From assembly GCF_001194135.2 (NCBI RefSeq), contig NC_068981.1:481781-513903 (forward strand): a stretch of DNA of 32,123 bases. Direction: 5' to 3'. Below the pieces are notes generated by a model. It had not been told where the DNA came from. It saw only the letters and a list, made by a program, of their open reading frames with translations, and ran no database searches. Both the position numbers and the translations under genes were made by a program. The stretch is from Octopus bimaculoides (Eukaryota). Every line of letters starts with the position of its first letter. The stretch's first letter is position 1. This document shows positions 6,727 to 27,249 of the stretch, piece after piece.

Positions 6727-6943
6727 ATTCTTTTCTACTCTAGGCACAAAGCCTGAAATTTTCGAGGAGGTGAGGCAGTTGATTAGATTGACCCCAGTAT
6801 GCAACTGGTACTTAATTTATCGACCTTGAAAGGATGAAAGGCAAAATCGACCTTGGCGAAATTTGAACTCAGCATGCCGAGCAAATGCGTAGCAGAATTT
6901 CATCTGCCATTATGTTCTAACATTTCTGCCTGTTCGCCACCTT
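6727..6943 (-). mobile_element. SINE family C (tRNA head AAGGCGGCGAGCTGGCAGAA, central GCCTTTCATCCTTTCGGGGTCGATAAATTAAGTACC domain)
   Basis: A/B-box-like head. Homologous to 8569, 16551, 17398, 21471 and 27728. Confidence 0.8.
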
Positions 6944-10170: not shown

Positions 10171-10385
10171 GTGTTGCCAGTACCGCCTGACTGGCCCTCG
10201 TGCGGGTGATACGTAAAAGCACCCACTACACTCTCTGAGTGGTTGGCGTTAGGAAGGGCATCCAGCTGTAGAAACTCTGCCAAATCAGATTGGAGCCTGG
10301 TGTAGCCATCTGGTTTCACCAGTCCTCAGTCAAATCGTCCAACCTATGCTAGCATGGAAAGCGGACGTTAAACGATGATGATGAT
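9925..10385 (+). repeat. Degenerate (TG/TA)n array (9925-10175) followed by a family B copy (10176-10385)
   Basis: Directly visible, plus homology to other B copies. Confidence 0.85.
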
Positions 10386-11030: not shown

Positions 11031-11232
11031 ACATAATTAAATGACTCATAAGCTGATAATACATCATGTTCCTGAATGCCCAATATTTGGTACTCCATGT
11101 GACCTCAGTGAGTTTTGCCAACTTACAAGGGCACAGTAAAATGTGTTTCATTTGAATGAGAAAAAGAAAAGAATGTACATTATTTACATTGTTTACATTT
11201 GACGGATATTTGTCCTCATCTTGTTTGTTGTT

Positions 11233-11278
11233 AACACAACATTTCGGCTGATATACCCTCCAGCCTTCATCAGGTGTC
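11233..11278 (-). ncRNA. Minimal type-I hammerhead ribozyme motif (Penelope-type)
   Basis: Reads GACAC-CUGAUGA-A-GGCUG(GAGGGUAUAU)CAGCC-GAAA-UG-UU-GUGUU. Catalytic core intact, stem I GACAC/GUGUU, stem II GGCUG/CAGCC, GUU cleavage triplet. Confidence 0.75.
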
Positions 11279-11418
11279 TTGGGGAAATTTCGAACATGGG
11301 TTCTCATTCCTAAGGTATTTTCCGATGTCATTATTATTCAGATCACTGCCTGGAATCGAACACGGAATCTTGGGGTTAGTAGCCTGTGCTCTTAACCACT
11401 ACGCGATATGCCATGGGC

Positions 11419-11464
<46 letters not shown>

Positions 11465-11511
11465 TCGAAAAATACCTTAGGAATGAGAACCCAGGTTCGA
11501 AATTTCCCCAA

Positions 11512-11554
11512 GACATCTGATGAAGGCTGGAGGGTATAACAGCCGAAATGTGTC
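11512..11554 (+). ncRNA. Second hammerhead motif, probably inactive (cleavage triplet deleted)
   Basis: Reads GACAU-CUGAUGA-A-GGCUG...CAGCC-GAAA-U-GUGUC, lacking GUU. Confidence 0.6.
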
Positions 11555-12266
11555 AACAACAAACAAGATGAGGACAAATATCCATCAAATGTAAATAATT
11601 CCTCATCTCTTAAATATAGAACTGTAGAAAAGAATGTAGTTAAGAAAGATCCTTCAATTAAACAAATTGTCAAGATTGTAGCAAGAAAGATAATTCTTCT
11701 TTGGCAAAAGGCATCTATCCTTTGTGTTGCAATTGAGTCAGTTTGACCGAAAATCTTAAACTTTTATCCAAAGTACCAAGCATTACTGAAATCTGTGAAA
11801 AATAGCAAAAATGTGCCATCATTTTAAAAAAAGTGTAATGTGCTTAAAAACAAAGCAACAAAAGATTTATTTGACATTTCCTGTTGCAAGTGCAACTACT
11901 TTAAAAACTGCAGTTGTAGTAGAGACAAAGAAGTATGACAGAAAGAAGAAGATTTTTTACAGGATCAATGAACAAATTGAAAAATGATCATTGGCAGAAT
12001 AGATCAAGCAGTATCTAAACAGAACATTCAGAGGTTGTTTAGAAAGAATCGGTCAGATCACAATGGCTCTTCTATGTCAGCAAAGGATTCTGAATTGTTA
12101 ATTATTTTTATCACCAAAATGTGTCAAGAATCAAAAATTGGTTTAGATGCAATTTTTATTTTAATGTGTGTGTAATCTACACCTCATGTAGCACACATAT
12201 TTGGTGACCTAGTATTAAAAATAATAAAGGAAACAGTTAAAAAGTTGATTTATTTTACGTAATTAT

Positions 12267-13329
12267 AGGCATAGGAATGGCTGTGGTAAGTAGCTTGCTA
12301 ACAAACCACATGGTTCCGAGTTCAGTCCCACTGCATGGCACCTTGGACAAGTGTCTTTTACTATAGCCTCAGGCTGACCAAAGCCTTGTGAGTGGATTTG
12401 GTAGATGGAAACTGAAAGAAGCCCGTCGTATCATCATCATCATCATCGTCGTTTAACGTCCGCTTTCCATGCTGGCATGGGTTGGACGATTTGACTGAGG
12501 ACTGGTGAAACCAGATGGTTACACCAGGCTCCAATCTGATTTGGCAGAGTTTCTACAGCTGGATGCCCTTCCTAATGCCAACCACTCAGAGAGTGTAGTG
12601 GGTGCTTTTACATGCCCCCGGCATGAAGGCCAGTNNNNNNNNNNNNNNNNNNNNNNNNNNNNNNNNNNNNNNNNNNNNNNNNNNNNNNNNNNNNNNNNNN
12701 NNNNNNNNNNNNNNNNNNNNNNNNNNNNNNNNNNNNNNNNNNNNNNNNNNNNNNNNNNNNNNNNNNNNNNNNNNNNNNNNNNNNNNNNNNNNNNNNNNNN
12801 NNNNNNNNNNNNNNNNNNNNNNNNNNNNNNNNNNNNNNNNNNNNNNNNNNNNNNNNNNNNNNNNNNNNNNNNNNNNNNNNNNNNNNNNNNNNNNNNNNNN
12901 NNNNNNNNNNNNNNNNNNNNNNNNNNNNNNNNNNNNNNNNNNNNNNNNNNNNNNNNNNNNNNNNNNNNNNNNNNNNNNNNNNNNNNNNNNNNNNNNNNNN
13001 NNNNNNNNNNNNNNNNNNNNNNNNNNNNNNNNNNNNNNNNNNNNNNNNNNNNNNNNNNNNNNNNNNNNNNNNNNNNNNNNNNNNNNNNNNNNNNNNNNNN
13101 NNNNNNNNNNNNNNNNNNNNNNNNNNNNNNNNNNNNNNNNNNNNNNNNNNNNNNNNNNNNNNNNNNNNNNNNNNNNNNNNNNNNNNNNNNNNNNNNNNNN
13201 NNNNNNNNNNNNNNNNNNNNNNNNNNNNNNNNNNNNNNNNNNNNTGGGGTCGATTTGCTCGACTAAGGGCAGTGCTCCAGCATGACCACAGTCAAATGAC
13301 TGAAACAGGTAAATGAGTAAAGAGAGTAA
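12267..13329 (+). mobile_element. Family A copy with a nested family B copy (12431-12634, -) spanning an assembly gap
   Basis: Head at 12267-12430 and tail at 13245-13329. Confidence 0.7.
12635..13244. other. Assembly gap (610 N)
   Basis: N run. Confidence 1.
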
Positions 13330-16199: not shown

Positions 16200-17008
16200 T
16201 TTTTATGTAGCACCGGCCCTGACAGAGTCACTAAGTACCTTTTTGTTGTGCAAGGTAATTTGGTGACCCTGTTGGTGCTGGTGCTACAAAAAAAGTGCTG
16301 GGGCTTCATAAAGCACTGGTGATGATGTCACGTAAAAACACTAGTGATGGTGTCACGTAATTTGCACAGGTGCTGGTGCCACCAGTGGTGGTGTCACGTG
16401 AAAAGCACTGGTGCTAGTGCCACATACAAAGTAGTACCCAGTACACTCTGTAAAGTGGTTGGTGTTAGGAAGAGCATCCAGCTATGGAAACCATGTCAGA
16501 ACACAATGGAGCCTGGCGTGACTCCTGGCCTTGTTCTCTCCTGTCAAGCTGTTAGCACGCCAGGCGAAATGCTAAGCGGTATTTCGTTTGACTTTGTGTT
16601 CTGAGTACAAATTTCACCGAGGTCGACTTTGCCTTTCATCTTTTGGGGGTTGATAAATTAAGTACCAGTTGCGTACTGGGGTCAATCTAATCGACTGGCC
16701 CCCTCCCCCCAAATTTCAGGCCTGGTGCCTAGGGTAGAAAAGATTATTCATCGTTTAGTTTACTGTAGCCGTTCAGGTTAAAACAGGGAAGTGGAGCCAA
16801 GAACAGCTGTCTGTAGAAACTTGTGTATGGCAATGAAGGTAAAACCTACAAGAAAGAATTCTTGAAATAGACTGAGCAAATACAAAAGCTTTAGCCATCA
16901 GGCTAGTAGATGGGATTTTAATACCATCTGCCATGCTCAATATATGGGGAAAGAGTAGGCATACCAGCATGGAAAACAGACATTAAATGATGATGATGAT
17001 GATGATGA
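16200..17008 (+). mobile_element. Family B copy split at 16552/16961 by an inserted inverted duplication
   Basis: ...TCCTGTCAAGCTGT resumes ~410 bp later as CATACCAGCATGGAAAACAGACATTAAATGATGATG. Confidence 0.75.
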
Positions 17009-17593
17009 GTACACTTACTACTAACCACTCTTAGGCATCTGCTACATTCAAAGTTTTTCTTTTTCAGTATGTCTGTGGTTTTATTGCAGCTCTGCTTTAC
17101 TCATAGTTTCTTTGTATTAGGCACACTCTGTTGGACCCCTGCCTACTCTTTCTTCACATATTGAGCATGGCAGATGGTATTAGAATCCCATCTACTAGCC
17201 TGATGGCTAAAGCTTTTGTATTTGCTCAGTCTATTTCAAGAATTCTTTCTTGTAGGTTTTAGCTTCATGTGTAAAATTTTCTGACTCAGTCAACTATGAG
17301 AACTAAATCATTGCCATACACAAGTTTCTACAGACAGCTGTTCTTGGCTCCACTTCTCTGTTTTAACCTGAACGGCTACAGTAAACTAAACGATGAATGA
17401 TCTTTTCTACCCTAGGCACCAGGCCTGAAATTTTTAGGGAGGGAGCCAGTCGATTACATCAACCCCAGTGCATAAATGGTACTTAATTTATTGACCCTGA
17501 AAGGATGAATGGCATAGTCGACCTCGGCGGAATTTGAACTCAGAACACAACGACAGACGAAATACCGCTTAGCATTTCATCCAGCATGCTAAC
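16551..17593. repeat. Long inverted repeat: arm 16551-16961 versus arm 17140-17593, with a 178-nt loop
   Basis: Hand alignment: 7 mismatches in 251 nt plus a 43-nt indel for 16711-16961 versus 17140-17433. Outer family C portions are ~80% identical. Confidence 0.9.
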
Positions 17594-17615
17594 ATTTCTG
17601 CCAGCTTACCACCTT
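17398..17615 (-). mobile_element. SINE family C, full copy
   Basis: Head AAGGTGGTAAGCTGGCAGAAATGTTAGC on the minus strand. Confidence 0.8.
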
Positions 17616-18223
17616 AGATGAATGAAGGCCGAAAACAATAGATAATGGCTGAGGACTGAGCTATGATGAACATTTATCTGCGCATTAAATTCCTTGCTGA
17701 ATTTGTTGCTATTCTTACCTTACTGACAACACCTTTGTACATGGCTTGCACAGTTCTCACTAGCCATTTGTCTACATCTAGTTACCTTTGTGGCCACCAG
17801 AGCTTGGTGTGTTTCACCCTGTGTTAGGGTCATAGGCCTTCTCTCAATCAATGAATGCGAGGTGTTGTGGTGAGTTTTTTTTACTTAGCACTCATGTAGT
17901 CATTTTACGAGGAAGAGGGTATCTGTGGTACCCCTTTCTGGCACACAGTTAATCTGCATCTCATCTAAGCTAATTTCATTCCTAATTAGTTGTGCAACCT
18001 ATTGGTATTTTTGCTGTTTTTGAACTTGATGTTTCTTTCAAGAACATCTCTGCCTTTGTTGCATCTTATGAAGGTATGTATGTGTGTATGTGTCTGTGCA
18101 CCTCAACCAGTCACCCTCTTTCCAGCTGTGGGAAGGTTCGCTTTAAACTTTCTACTCTTGTAAGTTGCAAAGTGGCCCTACTAAAGTTGCTGTCACATAA
18201 AAAGCACCCAGTATCCCCTATAA

Positions 18224-18959: not shown

Positions 18960-19402
18960 NNNNNNNNNNNNNNNNNNNNNNNNNNNNNNNNNNNNNNNNN
19001 NNNNNNNNNNNNNNNNNNNNNNNNNNNNNNNNNNNNNNNNNNNNNNNNNNNNNNNNNNNNNNNNNNNNNNNNNNNNNNNNNNNNNNNNNNNNNNNNNNNN
19101 NNNNNNNNNNNNNNNNNNNNNNNNNNNNNNNNNNNNNNNNNNNNNNNNNNNNNNNNNNNNNNNNNNNNNNNNNNNNNNNNNNNNNNNNNNNNNNNNNNNN
19201 NNNNNNNNNNNNNNNNNNNNNNNNNNNNNNNNNNNNNNNNNNNNNNNNNNNNNNNNNNNNNNNNNNNNNNNNNNNNNNNNNNNNNNNNNNNNNNNNNNNN
19301 NNNNNNNNNNNNNNNNNNNNNNNNNNNNNNNNNNNNNNNNNNNNNNNNNNNNNNNNNNNNNNNNNNNNNNNNNNNNNNNNNNNNNNNNNNNNNNNNNNNN
19401 NN
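18960..19402. other. Assembly gap (443 N)
   Basis: N run. Confidence 1.
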
Positions 19403-19918: not shown

Positions 19919-20812
19919 TTCTTTATTGAGCCATGCAGGGTCGAACACGGAGGGGACAATACAATGTAGAATTTTTCTTTTCAAGACCAATCAATAGGGA
20001 TTGAAAACATTTTGGGACATGTACAGAAAGAGATAAAGAGGTAACATTTTAACAACAGAAATTCTCAAAAGGGGGAGAAAATAAAACATTGACTTGGGTT
20101 ATCTGTGGAAAGAAAAACCTATGAAAAAACCATGGTAACCTCGGAAAGAAAAAAAAACATGAGAGTAAAGCGCCCTTTCTCTTTTTGTTTTATGGGTTCA
20201 TGCTCAAAGTAGGTCTGTCATTCATGCGTACCATCCTTGCTACATTCATCCACCTTTTATTAAACTTTTCATTAGACAAGACTTCCCTCTCTACCCTTAC
20301 CTGCCTTTTCAAGTAATACTTGAAAAAGTTGTTGAGAGGTTGGCCAGAGAGGAAAGTATTTGTTTTTAAGCCTTTCAAACGAGTCCCCCCCATACACATT
20401 CTTTCACTATAGCCACCAGCACCATGAAAACTGCTTTGCCTTCCCGGTTAAAGGAAGGTGGCAGGGCAATATTTATGATCGACTTGTCTAACATCCGGAC
20501 TTGTCCCACACGACAGCAGCCATTCAACATAGGCCCACAGTTCTGAAATATTTGGACATTGCACGAGTGTGTGCAGAACAGTTTCATCATTCTGACCACA
20601 TCTCGGGCAGGTCGGTTCAGTTTTTCTTGATCTGTGTCTGTAGACCTCATCTTGGATGAGCAATGTTCCTCAATAGCACTAACAGGCCAAGGATTTCTGG
20701 AAATTGTCCATAGGTCCTGGCTCAAAAGTGGTCCTGAAGAGGCGAGTCAGGTATTCCCTATTGACACCTAGAGTCTCCTCAAGAATGTCATCGCACCTCC
20801 TCTCTATCAATC
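19919..20812 (-). mobile_element. 5'-truncated Tx1/L1-clade LINE: ORF2 C-terminal zinc knuckle, stop codon and 3' UTR
   Basis: CPRCGQNDETVLHTLVQCP (zf-RVT-type CCHC), then FFKYYLKRQVRVEREVLSNEKFNKRW. Two in-frame stops and a frameshift. The 3' UTR ends at AATAAAG. Confidence 0.8.
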
Positions 20813-23876: not shown

Positions 23877-24294
23877 ATCATCATCATCATCGTTTAACGT
23901 CCGCTTTTCATGTTAGCATGGGTTGGATGATCTGACTGAGGACTGGCGAACCAGATGTCTACACCAGGTTCCAATCTGATTTGGCAGAGTTTCTATAGCT
24001 GGATGCCCTTCCTAACGCCAACCACTCTGAGAGTGTAGTGGGTGCTTTTACGTGCTACCGGCACGAAGGCCAGTCAGGCGGTACTGGCAACGGCCATGCT
24101 CAGAATAGTGTATTTTACGTGCCATCTGCACAGGAGCCAGTCAAGTGGCACTGGCAATGACCTTGCTCGAATGTTTTTTCATGTGCCACCGGCATAAGTG
24201 CCAGGAAAGCGATGCTGGTAACGATCACGCTCAAATGGTGCTATTTATGTGCCACTGGCATGGAAGCCAGACAGCTGCTCTGGCAATGATCACG

Positions 24295-25999: not shown

Positions 26000-26349
26000 N
26001 NNNNNNNNNNNNNNNNNNNNNNNNNNNNNNNNNNNNNNNNNNNNNNNNNNNNNNNNNNNNNNNNNNNNNNNNNNNNNNNNNNNNNNNNNNNNNNNNNNNN
26101 NNNNNNNNNNNNNNNNNNNNNNNNNNNNNNNNNNNNNNNNNNNNNNNNNNNNNNNNNNNNNNNNNNNNNNNNNNNNNNNNNNNNNNNNNNNNNNNNNNNN
26201 NNNNNNNNNNNNNNNNNNNNNNNNNNNNNNNNNNNNNNNNNNNNNNNNNNNNNNNNNNNNNNNNNNNNNNNNNNNNNNNNNNNNNNNNNNNNNNNNNNNN
26301 NNNNNNNNNNNNNNNNNNNNNNNNNNNNNNNNNNNNNNNNNNNNNNNNN
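26000..26349. other. Assembly gap (350 N)
   Basis: N run. Confidence 1.
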
Positions 26350-26607
26350 GGCAAGGGGGCTGAGTTCCTTTTGAGTGTCGGGTCTCATGGAGGCAAGGGG
26401 GCTGAGTTCCTTTTGAGTGTTGGGCCTCATGGAGGCAAGGGAGCTGAGTTCCTTTCGAGTGTCAGGCCTCATGGAGGCAAGGGGGCTGAGTTCCTTTCGA
26501 GTGTCAGGCCTCATGGAGGCAAGGGGGCTGAGTTCCTTTCGAGTGTCGGGCCTCATGGAGGCAAGAGGACTGATTTCCTTTTGAGTGTTGGGCCTCATGA
26601 AGGCAAT
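26350..26607. repeat. 42-bp minisatellite, six visible copies (GGCAAGGGGGCTGAGTTCCTTTCGAGTGTCGGGCCTCATGGA), forming the 5' part of a family B copy that ends at ~26917
   Basis: Direct unit count. Downstream sequence aligns with 30130-30455. Confidence 0.9.
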
Positions 26608-27249
26608 GACCTAGACCTTTAGCATTATGTCGTGCTTGAGAAGAAGACCTATCAAGCCAAGCAAAATTGCAGTTGTGGCAGATAGTGGTGTCATGCAAAT
26701 TGGTACCTGTGCCACTGGCATATAAAAGCACCCTGGTGTCACGTAAATGGCACCTGTGCCACTGGCACATAAAAACACCCATTACACTCTCAAAGTGGTT
26801 GGCATTAGGAAGGGCACCCAGCCATTGAAAACCATGGTGAAGCCTTCCAGCGTGCCAGCCCAGTCAAACTGTCTAACCCATGCCAGCATGGACAACAGAT
26901 GTTAAATGATGATGATGGCCTTCATGTATAGAATGCAAATAATGATTTTTTACATGGTTCACTTTTTCTTAGTAAAACATCTCAGAATAAATAAAATATC
27001 AGCTGGAACTGATATTTTGTAGAACTCATCTCTCTGAAGAGAATTATTGATGTCTTTCTAAAAATACAAAGCATCATTTCATCTCTGTAGGTGTTCTATG
27101 TATACATAAACATGTTCCTATAATTCCAAATTTAGTTCTTATCCTTTATCTGCCCACTTTTATTTTATGTATCTATGACACAAGGGAACACAATCCTATC
27201 TCCTGTACATCGATTCCTCCTCTTGACCATGAGTGACATGTAACTAAAG

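What the first reader, a model, noticed from the sequence alone, without database searches (positions are those of the whole stretch)
16551..17593. Kilobase intronic fold-back with a sharp identity boundary (~97% core, ~80% flanks)
Seen: 16711-16961 is the reverse complement of 17140-17433 with 7 mismatches. The left arm lacks 43 nt bounded by TCAT microhomology, so the right arm looks ancestral. About 215 nt of the core is non-SINE sequence. The pairing continues outward through two inverted family C segments at only ~80% identity. The left arm splits a family B element without a TSD. Inference: a local templated inverted insertion (template switch or polymerase theta-like repair), followed by arm-to-arm gene conversion near the loop, or a second event. 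In the pre-mRNA this would be ~400 bp of dsRNA. Known: coleoid cephalopods show very extensive ADAR A-to-I editing, so this is a candidate hyper-editing site or small-RNA source.
Basis: partly seen in the sequence, partly recalled or inferred. Interest (0 to 1): 0.7.

Follow-up and report, generated by a model that had tools for sequence, protein, structure and literature searches.

The report
Inverted SINE pair extended by templated repair
A roughly 1-kb hairpin-forming inverted repeat is really present, and it is best read as a one-off DNA-repair scar in which about 250 bases next to one short mobile element were copied backwards beside a second, oppositely oriented copy; this is an ordinary kind of event with no shown function.

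Summary
Bases 16550-16961 are the reverse complement of 17140-17594, with one 43-nt gap in the left arm and a 178-nt loop.

Identity steps sharply after 16710, from 29/161 mismatches in the outer part to 7/251 in the inner part (Fisher p=1.4e-7). CpG decay explains only 10-11 of the 29 outer mismatches.

The right arm is ancestral. It holds a full-length family-C SINE flanked by a 9-nt direct repeat (TCATTCATC), followed by unique flank. The left arm sits inside a family-B SINE that has lost 9-11 nt and shows no target-site duplication.

In the SINE body, the two C segments are no more alike (81%) than unrelated C copies in the window (73-84%). Their common ancestor still had at least 13 CpGs.

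My preferred reading is as follows:
- Two old, separately inserted, inverted C copies supplied the homology.
- A later break repair or template switch copied about 250-294 nt of the right flank in reverse.
- One junction is seamless inside the SINE. The other is a 2-nt microhomology (CA).

An older whole-arm fold-back that was later re-homogenised remains a live rival.

Untested: "intronic", transcription, editing and small RNAs. No exon was found, and no outside copy of the locus could be retrieved.

This is a new member of a known kind, of modest interest.

The parts
16310..16549 (+). Family-B SINE, left part, ending ...CTGTCAAGC. This is the target that was broken.
   Evidence: MAFFT alignment with 15 other B copies in the window; BLAST of the B query; 41-nt tandem units in its 5' region.
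16550..16710 (+). Left outer arm: a family-C SINE segment that is 5'-truncated, starting at model position 22 of 206. It is 82% identical to the right-arm SINE.
   Evidence: nhmmer hit 16550-16734, model positions 22-206; 29/161 mismatches; identity matrices.
16711..16743 (+). The last 33 nt of the SINE-C 3' end, already inside the high-identity tract. The switch point lies within SINE homology.
   Evidence: Change point after 16710; the 3' end is shared with copy C6722; 40/41 identity between L and R over 16711-16751.
16744..16752 (+). Copy (TTATTCATC) of the right-arm SINE's 3' flanking repeat. There is no matching repeat on the 5' side of the left arm.
   Evidence: TCATTCATC at 17400-17392 and 17625-17617; alignment.
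16753..16961 (+). Reverse-complement copy of the unique flank 17391-17140. It lacks 43 nt between 16832 and 16833. Three mismatches cluster at 16944-16948.
   Evidence: There is no other copy in the window.
16962..17139 (+). Loop or spacer. 16962-17008 is the 3' remainder of the family-B SINE (TACCAGCATGG...(ATG)n). 17009-17139 is unique sequence.
   Evidence: The inner junction is GGCA|TACC, with CA shared with the B consensus CCCA|TGCC.
17140..17391 (-). Unique 3' flank of the right-arm SINE, which served as donor or template of the copy. It includes 17269-17311, the 43-nt segment absent from the left arm.
17392..17400 (-). 3' copy of the 9-nt direct repeat TCATTCATC, the candidate target-site duplication of the right-arm SINE.
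   Evidence: Shuffles gave P=0.03 for any match of 8 nt or more between the two 50-nt end regions.
17401..17616 (-). Full-length family-C SINE, with the head AAGGTGGTAAGCTGGCAGAAA... and the B-box-like GAGTTCAAATTCCGCC. This is the ancestral copy. Bases 17434-17594 pair with the left outer arm.
   Evidence: nhmmer 17615-17410, model positions 1-206; alignment of 7 copies.
17617..17625 (-). 5' copy of the 9-nt direct repeat TCATTCATC.

Best explanation
The structure has two layers of different age.

Layer 1 (old, ordinary). Two family-C SINEs inserted separately, in opposite orientation and about 430 bp apart.
- One is a full-length copy with a 9-nt TSD (now 17401-17616, minus strand).
- The other is a 5'-truncated copy inside a family-B SINE (now 16550 to about 16743, plus strand).
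- They have since diverged like any two copies of the family, to 82% identity.

Layer 2 (recent). This event happened in roughly the last 8-14% of the time since the two C segments shared an ancestor.
- A break or stalled fork occurred just 3' of the left C copy.
- It was repaired by DNA synthesis that used the inverted right copy as homologous template.
- The 3' end paired within the last roughly 33-41 nt of the SINE and copied outward through the right copy's TSD and 252 nt of unique flank.
- It skipped 43 nt between two ATGA repeats, either then or later.
- The new strand was released at 17140 and joined to the other break end at a 2-nt microhomology (CA).
- This removed the left copy's own tail and TSD, plus 9-11 nt of the B element.
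- The same product arises if the opposite end snapped back at 17140 and synthesis ran into the SINE until it could anneal to the left copy.

Consequence. The result is a 412/455-nt inverted repeat with a 178-nt spacer. If transcribed, it would fold into about 230-250 bp of near-perfect dsRNA plus about 160 bp of imperfect dsRNA.

Shown: the anatomy, the junctions, the identity step and the relatedness of the SINE copies.
Inferred: the order of events, the enzymology and any RNA consequence.
For: - There is a sharp step in identity after 16710, about 33-41 nt inside the SINE 3' end: 29/161 against 7/251 mismatches, p=1.4e-7.
- CpG transitions account for only 10-11 of the 29 outer mismatches (and my reading). 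The outer segments are therefore truly older.
- In the well-aligned SINE body (16599-16710), L-R identity is 81%. L-C6722 is 83% and R-C27768 is 84%. The two arm SINEs behave like unrelated family members.
- The common ancestor of the two segments had at least 13 CpGs. Five are still intact in both arms, three decayed in both arms but in different directions, and four decayed in one arm. This is the state expected of fresh copies from a master. Both CpGs of the inner tract are intact in both arms.
- The right SINE is full length (model 1-206) and is flanked by TCATTCATC on both sides. The left one starts at model position 22 and carries only the copy of the right element's 3' repeat.
- The left arm interrupts a B SINE that lacks 9-11 nt and has no TSD. 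The inner junction shares CA.
- The unique flank has no other copy in the window.
- Precedent 1: inverted Alu pairs of 83-85% identity mediate a first template switch, with the second junction at 1-9 bp of microhomology (PMC11293582).
- Precedent 2: foldback priming at one DSB end followed by end-joining capture at the other (PMC11724301).
Against: - Only five other C copies were available as comparators, so "no closer than unrelated copies" rests on small numbers.
- Over the 5' 49 nt, L and R are each other's best match (84% against 55-73%), and they share a few private states such as TTGTGTTC and TAAGCGG. These could be subfamily markers or shared history.
- The innermost 18 nt (16944-16961) hold 3 mismatches, P about 0.004-0.015 at the tract's rate. 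That fits an internal homogenised patch in older arms at least as well as it fits error-prone synthesis near a junction.
- The model needs an extra deletion of the left SINE's tail, its TSD and 9-11 nt of B.
- No orthologous or population data could be obtained.
Confidence: 0.42

Rival explanations
1. Old whole-arm fold-back followed by partial re-homogenisation. A single ancient snap-back insertion copied 17140-17594 into the break in the B SINE. The arms then diverged to about 82%. Later a gene-conversion-like or quasipalindrome template-switch patch re-copied about 233-276 nt between the arms.
For: - The whole left arm sits in B with no TSD and a 9-11-nt target loss. The geometry fits one snap-back primed at CA.
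- The best two-boundary model is a tract at 16711-16943 (4/233 mismatches) flanked on both sides by about 18% divergence (32/179). This improves log-likelihood by 3.6 over a single boundary.
- L and R are mutually closest overall, at 82% against no more than 81% for other pairs.
- Conversion of near-perfect inverted repeats into perfect ones is the classical signature of short-range template switching (PMC7954356).
Against: - The L/R ancestor still had at least 13 CpGs, while each arm has since lost about 40-45% of them. The fold-back would therefore have had to occur very soon after the right SINE inserted.
- In the SINE body, L-R is no closer than unrelated copies.
- From general knowledge, homologous conversion between arms about 15% diverged is strongly disfavoured.
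- The inner boundary rests on one cluster of 3 mismatches, which could be a single complex mutation.
Confidence: 0.27
2. A single recent event using two templates. Snap-back synthesis copied 17140-17433, then switched within the SINE to a different family-C copy elsewhere. It copied about 160 nt there and was then end-joined into B.
For: - One event explains the missing TSD, the target deletion, the seamless boundary inside the SINE, the unrelatedness of the L and R SINE segments and the 43-nt skip.
- Iterative template switches are typical of MMBIR-type repair (PMC11293582; PMC11724301).
Against: - No copy in the 32-kb window is closer than 83% to the left SINE segment.
- The model requires an ectopic homeologous re-annealing and then a junction with 0-3 nt of microhomology.
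Confidence: 0.12
3. The pattern is created or exaggerated by assembly. The window comes from a scaffold with gaps. Canonical k-mer graphs can merge the two arms of an inverted repeat and erase real differences, or misorient the spacer.
For: - Three runs of N in the window show scaffolding.
Against: - The arms differ by 36 substitutions and a 43-nt indel.
- The spacer is 178 nt of non-repeated sequence.
- The B SINE resumes in the correct orientation and register immediately after the left arm.
- No gap lies within 1.3 kb of the structure.
- Merging cannot create an 82%/97% step from uniformly diverged arms.
Confidence: 0.05
4. The arms are two copies of a longer composite mobile element, either a long SINE-C variant or a foldback or MITE-type element, rather than a local copy.
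For: The octopus-type repeat landscape is rich and poorly catalogued. Only 32 kb could be searched.
Against: - The right SINE ends at a 9-nt flanking repeat, before the unique part.
- Copy C6722, of the same subfamily, diverges exactly there.
- Independent copies would be uniformly diverged, not 82% in the head and 97% in the tail.
- No terminal repeat or TSD brackets 16550-17594, and there is no further copy in the window.
- Nothing was found in protein or metagenome look-ups.
Confidence: 0.04
5. The high identity of the inner tract is kept by selection on a functional long hairpin RNA, such as an endo-siRNA source or an ADAR-binding element. This could coexist with any of the origin models.
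For: - The predicted hairpin is very stable.
- Octopus shows the strongest hyper-editing signal of 19 species, and that signal is tied to long near-perfect dsRNA (PMC5625713).
Against: - There is no evidence of transcription.
- No Rfam family matches; all hits are far below gathering score.
- A young neutral duplication explains the identity without selection.
- Selection for pairing would not need to preserve the sequence of both arms.
Confidence: 0.05

Closest known systems
Inverted-repeat-mediated template switching (the first junction of DUP-TRP/INV-DUP events; Alu/Alu-mediated rearrangement)
   Same: One junction lies inside a pair of inverted, homeologous interspersed repeats, and Alu pairs of 83-85% identity suffice. 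The second junction has 1-9 bp of microhomology, sometimes with small deletions or templated bits (PMC11293582). Here junction 1 lies inside inverted SINE-C copies at 82% identity, and junction 2 is a 2-nt CA with a 9-11-nt loss.
   Different: The scale is about 250-300 bp copied across 0.4 kb, not kilobases to hundreds of kilobases. There is no triplication. This is a fixed or reference-allele event in an invertebrate, not a patient CNV.
Foldback (snap-back) templated inverted insertions at double-strand breaks
   Same: [quoted passage not shown] The outcome is an enlarged inverted repeat with a spacer (PMC11724301). The geometry here fits exactly.
   Different: The yeast events are 2 to about 150 bp, mostly under 14 bp, with a 41-nt loop. 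Here the copy is at least 252-455 nt with a 178-nt loop. The polymerase dependence is unknown.
Short-range template-switch mutations and quasipalindrome-to-palindrome conversion (four-point model)
   Same: They create or perfect nearby inverted repeats in one step and leave hairpin-capable DNA (PMC7954356).
   Different: Typical events span tens of nucleotides. Here the tract is about 233-294 nt and begins in a mobile-element homology.
Inverted SINE pairs as ADAR substrates (IRAlu-type dsRNA)
   Same: Neighbouring inverted copies of a repeat are predicted to pair into long dsRNA. Such pairs are the main hyper-editing targets across Metazoa, and the signal is highest in octopus (PMC5625713; PMC526178).
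   Different: Most of the near-perfect duplex here is duplicated unique flank, not repeat. Transcription and editing were not tested.

Membership tests
Local templated inverted insertion (foldback / MMBIR / TMEJ class) | The inserted DNA is the reverse complement of nearby sequence that is itself retained. | tested here: met
   16711-16961 equals the reverse complement of 17433-17140, and the donor is intact 178 nt away.
Local templated inverted insertion (foldback / MMBIR / TMEJ class) | No target-site duplication; a small loss at the target. | tested here: met
   The B SINE lacks 9-11 nt at the insertion and nothing is duplicated.
Local templated inverted insertion (foldback / MMBIR / TMEJ class) | Microhomology or homology at the junctions. 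| tested here: met
   The inner junction has a 2-nt CA. The other junction is either seamless within SINE homology or, under the whole-arm model, has 0-3 nt at 16549/16550.
Local templated inverted insertion (foldback / MMBIR / TMEJ class) | Dependence on a specific polymerase (Pol theta or Pol delta). | not testable with these tools
   This needs genetics.
Retrotransposed tRNA-type SINE (right-arm family C copy) | A multi-copy family with a shared 5' start and 3' end. | tested here: met
   There are 7 copies in 32 kb, and the right copy covers model positions 1-206.
Retrotransposed tRNA-type SINE (right-arm family C copy) | A flanking target-site duplication. | tested here: met
   TCATTCATC is found at 17625-17617 and 17400-17392; shuffle P=0.03.
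Retrotransposed tRNA-type SINE (right-arm family C copy) | A recognisable tRNA-like head. | tested here: inconclusive
   A B-box-like GAGTTCAAATTCC is visible, but ARAGORN calls no tRNA anywhere in the window.
Arm-to-arm gene conversion / quasipalindrome correction | A homogenised tract bounded on both sides by older, more diverged arm sequence. | tested here: inconclusive
   The outer boundary is clear. The inner boundary rests on 3 mismatches in the last 18 nt, P about 0.004-0.015.
Arm-to-arm gene conversion / quasipalindrome correction | The outer arm segments descend from one duplication. | tested here: inconclusive
   L-R identity is 82% overall, which is marginally the best pair. In the SINE body it is 81%, no better than unrelated copies.
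ADAR-edited inverted-repeat dsRNA | A long near-perfect intramolecular duplex. | tested here: met
   The MFE hairpin has dG -689/-667 kcal/mol and z -84/-52.
ADAR-edited inverted-repeat dsRNA | Both arms lie in one transcript, and the RNA carries A-to-G clusters. | not testable with these tools
   No exon was found in the window, and no RNA data are available.
MITE / foldback transposon | Terminal inverted repeats flanked by a TSD, with multiple copies. | tested here: not met
   The flanks CTGTCAAGC and TTTCTGCCAG differ. The right end simply continues into the SINE head. There is no other copy in the window.

The most novel reading that the evidence does not exclude
Closely spaced inverted SINE copies in this SINE-dense genome may routinely seed templated fold-back repair that drags adjacent unique DNA into the repeat. 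That would turn mediocre 80% SINE-SINE pairings into long near-perfect hairpins. It would then be a systematic source of the unusually high dsRNA and hyper-editing load reported for octopus. A second tight fold-back (11188-11599) in the same 32 kb is compatible with this idea but does not show it.
Probability: 0.12. Interest if true: 0.55.

Novelty: new member of a known kind. Interest (0 to 1): 0.3.

Why it matters
The locus is a clean natural record of a repair event with both junctions readable. The length copied (at least 250 nt) is greater than in the experimental foldback insertions I read about.

It also shows how a weak SINE-SINE pairing can become a long, near-perfect hairpin in one step. 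If such events are frequent in cephalopod genomes, they would help explain why these genomes hold so much dsRNA-forming sequence. This single locus has no demonstrated function, and inverted repeats are commonplace in this window (27 pairs of at least 60 nt within 4 kb).

Tried and rejected
- CpG decay as the cause of the identity step. Only 10-11 of the 29 outer mismatches are CpG transitions. The remainder, about 18 in about 150 sites, is still far above the 7/251 of the inner part.
- A long composite SINE or a MITE. Rejected on the 9-nt repeat at the SINE end, the C6722 comparison, the non-uniform divergence and the absence of a bracketing TSD.
- The right arm as the derived copy. Rejected because the right SINE is full length with flanking repeats, while the left arm interrupts a B SINE.
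- The 43 nt as an insertion in R. It matches nothing else in the window, and ATGA repeats flank it, so a deletion or skip is simpler.
- Finding the same locus elsewhere. All of the following came back empty:
  - exact-product look-ups of two ORFs spanning the junction and the core;
  - two protein searches;
  - two metagenome scans;
  - a literature search for the SINE sequences.
- Finding exons. I ran Pfam on joined unique ORF pieces (most of the 132 pieces of at least 40 aa; some low-complexity ones dropped). The only hit was a weak zf-RVT fragment at 20451-20669.
- Rfam and tRNA scans. Nothing came near threshold.

Full report
**1. What is there**

The repeat finder and a gapped local alignment agree. 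Window 16550-16961 (412 nt) is the reverse complement of 17140-17594 (455 nt). The alignment has one gap: 17269-17311 (43 nt) has no partner in the left arm. The arms are separated by 178 nt (16962-17139).

Column by column there are 36 mismatches. Twenty-nine fall in the outer 161 nt (16550-16710, 82.0% identity). Seven fall in the inner 251 nt (16711-16961, 97.2%). The maximum-likelihood change point is after 16710. None of 5000 permutations reached its likelihood ratio, and Fisher's test gives 1.4e-7.

Taken as RNA, either strand folds into one long hairpin. The free energies are -689 and -667 kcal/mol, against about -250 for dinucleotide shuffles. That result follows trivially from the repeat.

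**2. Anatomy**

The window holds seven copies of "family C". The right-arm copy is full length:
- It covers model positions 1-206 and has the head AAGGTGGTAAGCTGGCAGAAA.
- It lies on the minus strand at 17616-17401.
- It is flanked on both sides by the 9-mer TCATTCATC, at 17625-17617 and 17400-17392. I read this as its target-site duplication.

The sequence from 17391 down to 17140 is unique in the window apart from its left-arm copy.

The left-arm copy of C starts only at model position 22. It carries a copy of the right element's 3' repeat (TTATTCATC, 16744-16752) and 209 nt of the right element's flank.

The left arm lies inside a "family B" SINE. Alignment with 15 other B copies shows the following:
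- B runs up to ...CTGTCAAGC at 16549.
- B resumes at TACCAGCATGG...(ATG)n at 16962.
- 9-11 nt (CGTCCAACC(CA)) are missing and nothing is duplicated.

The inner junction reads GGCA|TACC. The CA could come either from B (CCCA|TGCC) or from the copied strand, so it is a 2-nt microhomology.

The 43-nt segment absent from the left arm is bounded by ATGA direct repeats and contains a small palindrome, GACTGAGTC.

**3. Why the identity steps**

I first asked whether the CpG-rich SINE head had simply decayed faster.
- Thirteen ancestral CpGs can be inferred in the outer segment.
- Five are intact in both arms, four decayed in one arm, three decayed in both arms but in different directions, and one changed otherwise.
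- This accounts for 10-11 of the 29 mismatches.
- The remaining roughly 18 mismatches in about 150 sites are still several-fold above the inner rate.

CpG decay is therefore not the explanation.

The same table is informative in another way. The last common ancestor of the two SINE segments still had essentially all its CpGs, and each arm has since lost about 40-45% of them. The two CpGs of the inner tract are intact in both arms. The outer segments therefore separated when the SINE was "fresh", and the inner tract is much younger. Jukes-Cantor distances are about 0.21 (outer) against 0.017-0.029 (inner), a ratio of roughly 8-14%.

**4. Are the two SINE segments sisters?**

- Over all 161 columns they are each other's best match, at 82% against 70-81% for other pairs.
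- In the well-aligned body (16599-16710) L-R is 81%, while L-C6722 is 83% and R-C27768 is 84%.
- Changes relative to the other copies are symmetrical: 13 specific to L and 11 specific to R.
- Many apparent "shared derived" states are simply CpGs that the other copies have lost.

With only five comparators this is not decisive. Still, there is no positive sign that the left SINE segment was copied from the right one.

**5. Preferred history**

Two C copies inserted independently, in inverted orientation and about 430 bp apart. The left one was 5'-truncated and landed inside B.

Much later, a break or stalled fork just 3' of the left copy was repaired using the inverted right copy as a homeologous template.
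- Synthesis primed within the last 33-41 nt of the SINE.
- The product was joined to the other end at CA.
- This removed the left copy's own tail and TSD, plus 9-11 nt of B.

The mirror-image version gives the same product. In that version the other end snaps back at 17140 and synthesises until it reaches SINE sequence that can anneal to the left end.

This history predicts three observed features: a seamless boundary inside the SINE, unrelated-looking outer segments, and a microhomology junction at the loop side.

It has two close precedents:
- Inverted Alu pairs of 83-85% identity mediate a first template switch, with the second junction at 1-9 bp of microhomology and small deletions (PMC11293582).
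- Foldback priming at one DSB end is followed by end-joining capture at the other, although those events reach only about 150 bp with a 41-nt loop (PMC11724301).

**6. The main rival**

A single old snap-back copied the whole 455 nt, and a later patch re-homogenised the middle.

In its favour:
- The best two-boundary model is a tract at 16711-16943 with 4/233 mismatches. It is flanked on both sides by about 18% divergence (32/179). The innermost 18 nt carry 3 mismatches (P about 0.004-0.015).
- Conversion of near-perfect inverted repeats into perfect ones is the classical outcome of short-range template switching (PMC7954356).

Against it:
- The fold-back would have had to follow the right SINE's insertion almost immediately, given the CpG argument above.
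- Conversion between arms about 15% diverged is disfavoured, from general knowledge.
- The three inner mismatches (16944, 16947, 16948) could be one complex change or error-prone synthesis next to a junction.

I put this rival at about 0.27, against 0.42 for the preferred history.

A one-step, two-template event gets about 0.12. In that model the SINE part is copied from a third C copy elsewhere. No candidate donor lies in the window; the best match is 83%.

**7. Artefact and transposon readings**

The window is a gapped scaffold, with N runs at 12635-13244, 18960-19402 and 26000-26349. Graph assemblers can blur inverted repeats. However, several points argue against an artefact:
- The arms differ by 36 substitutions and a 43-nt indel.
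- The spacer is unique sequence.
- B resumes in register right after the left arm.

Merging could at most have inflated the inner identity somewhat.

A composite "long SINE" or a MITE is rejected for these reasons:
- The SINE ends at its flanking repeat.
- The same-subfamily copy C6722 diverges there.
- Independent copies would not be 82% identical in the head and 97% in the tail.
- No TSD brackets the whole structure.

**8. What could not be tested**

- I found no exon. Pfam on the joined unique ORF pieces gave only a weak reverse-transcriptase zinc-binding fragment at 20451-20669. "Intronic" and the transcribed strand are therefore unknown.
- The taxon was not verified. The repeat sequences look to me like octopus SINEs, but that is recollection and not a test.
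- All attempts to retrieve the locus or its repeats from other assemblies failed.
- Editing and small-RNA production remain conjecture. They are reasonable conjecture, since hyper-editing tracks long near-perfect dsRNA made by neighbouring inverted repeats and is strongest in octopus. In that species 0.44% of random loci fall in such structures (PMC5625713). The same figure shows that loci of this kind are numerous there.

**9. Verdict**

The feature is real and accurately described. Its core interpretation, a templated inverted copy, stands. The two-tier identity is better explained by old inverted SINE copies seeding a younger templated event than by one insertion plus conversion, although the latter is not excluded.

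It is a new member of known kinds of event and has no demonstrated function. Interest is modest (0.3). The more interesting general idea is that inverted SINE pairs systematically seed such hairpins in this genome. That idea needs a genome-wide survey.

Noticed in passing
window 11188-11599: There is a second tight fold-back. The arms 11188-11338 and 11452-11599 are about 150 nt long and 94-95% identical, with one 3-nt indel. The 113-nt spacer holds a clear tRNA-like SINE head on the minus strand and an (AAT)n run. The arms look like the body of that same SINE family, one full copy and one 5'-truncated copy placed head-to-head. These are the only copies in the window.
   Followed up: partly
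window 12635-13244, 18960-19402, 26000-26349: Three runs of N show that the window is from a gapped, scaffolded assembly. This matters for trusting repeat structure.
   Followed up: yes
window 20451-20669 (minus strand): An ORF fragment with CPRCGQNDETVLHTLVQCP matches Pfam zf-RVT (E=1.7e-4, 22.6 bits, below the 27.5 cut-off). It is probably the C-terminal remnant of a non-LTR retrotransposon ORF2, a possible partner-type element for the SINEs.
   Followed up: partly
window 10190-10385 and 12439-12634: An inverted pair of family-B SINEs is 94% complementary over 196 nt and lies 2 kb apart. One arm abuts an N gap. It is another potential dsRNA-forming pair.
   Followed up: no
window 16310-16423, 1393-1587, 24046-24286, 26686-26780: The 5' region of family-B SINEs carries tandem units of 25-67 nt in variable copy number, with small internal hairpins (for example 16199-16234/16260-16295). 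This suggests a variable-length, repeat-bearing SINE head.
   Followed up: no
window 26350-26606: A 42-nt tandem array (6.1 copies, 93% matches) starts directly at the edge of an N gap, so its true length is unknown.
   Followed up: no
window 6738-6943: The family-C copy C6722 has a rearranged 5' half. A plus-strand partial model hit at 6869-6920 lies inside the minus-strand copy, hinting at a small internal inversion or hairpin.
   Followed up: no
whole window: 41% of the window has at least one other copy within the same 32 kb. There are 27 inverted pairs of at least 60 nt within 4 kb of each other, so inverted-repeat pairing potential is the norm here.
   Followed up: yes
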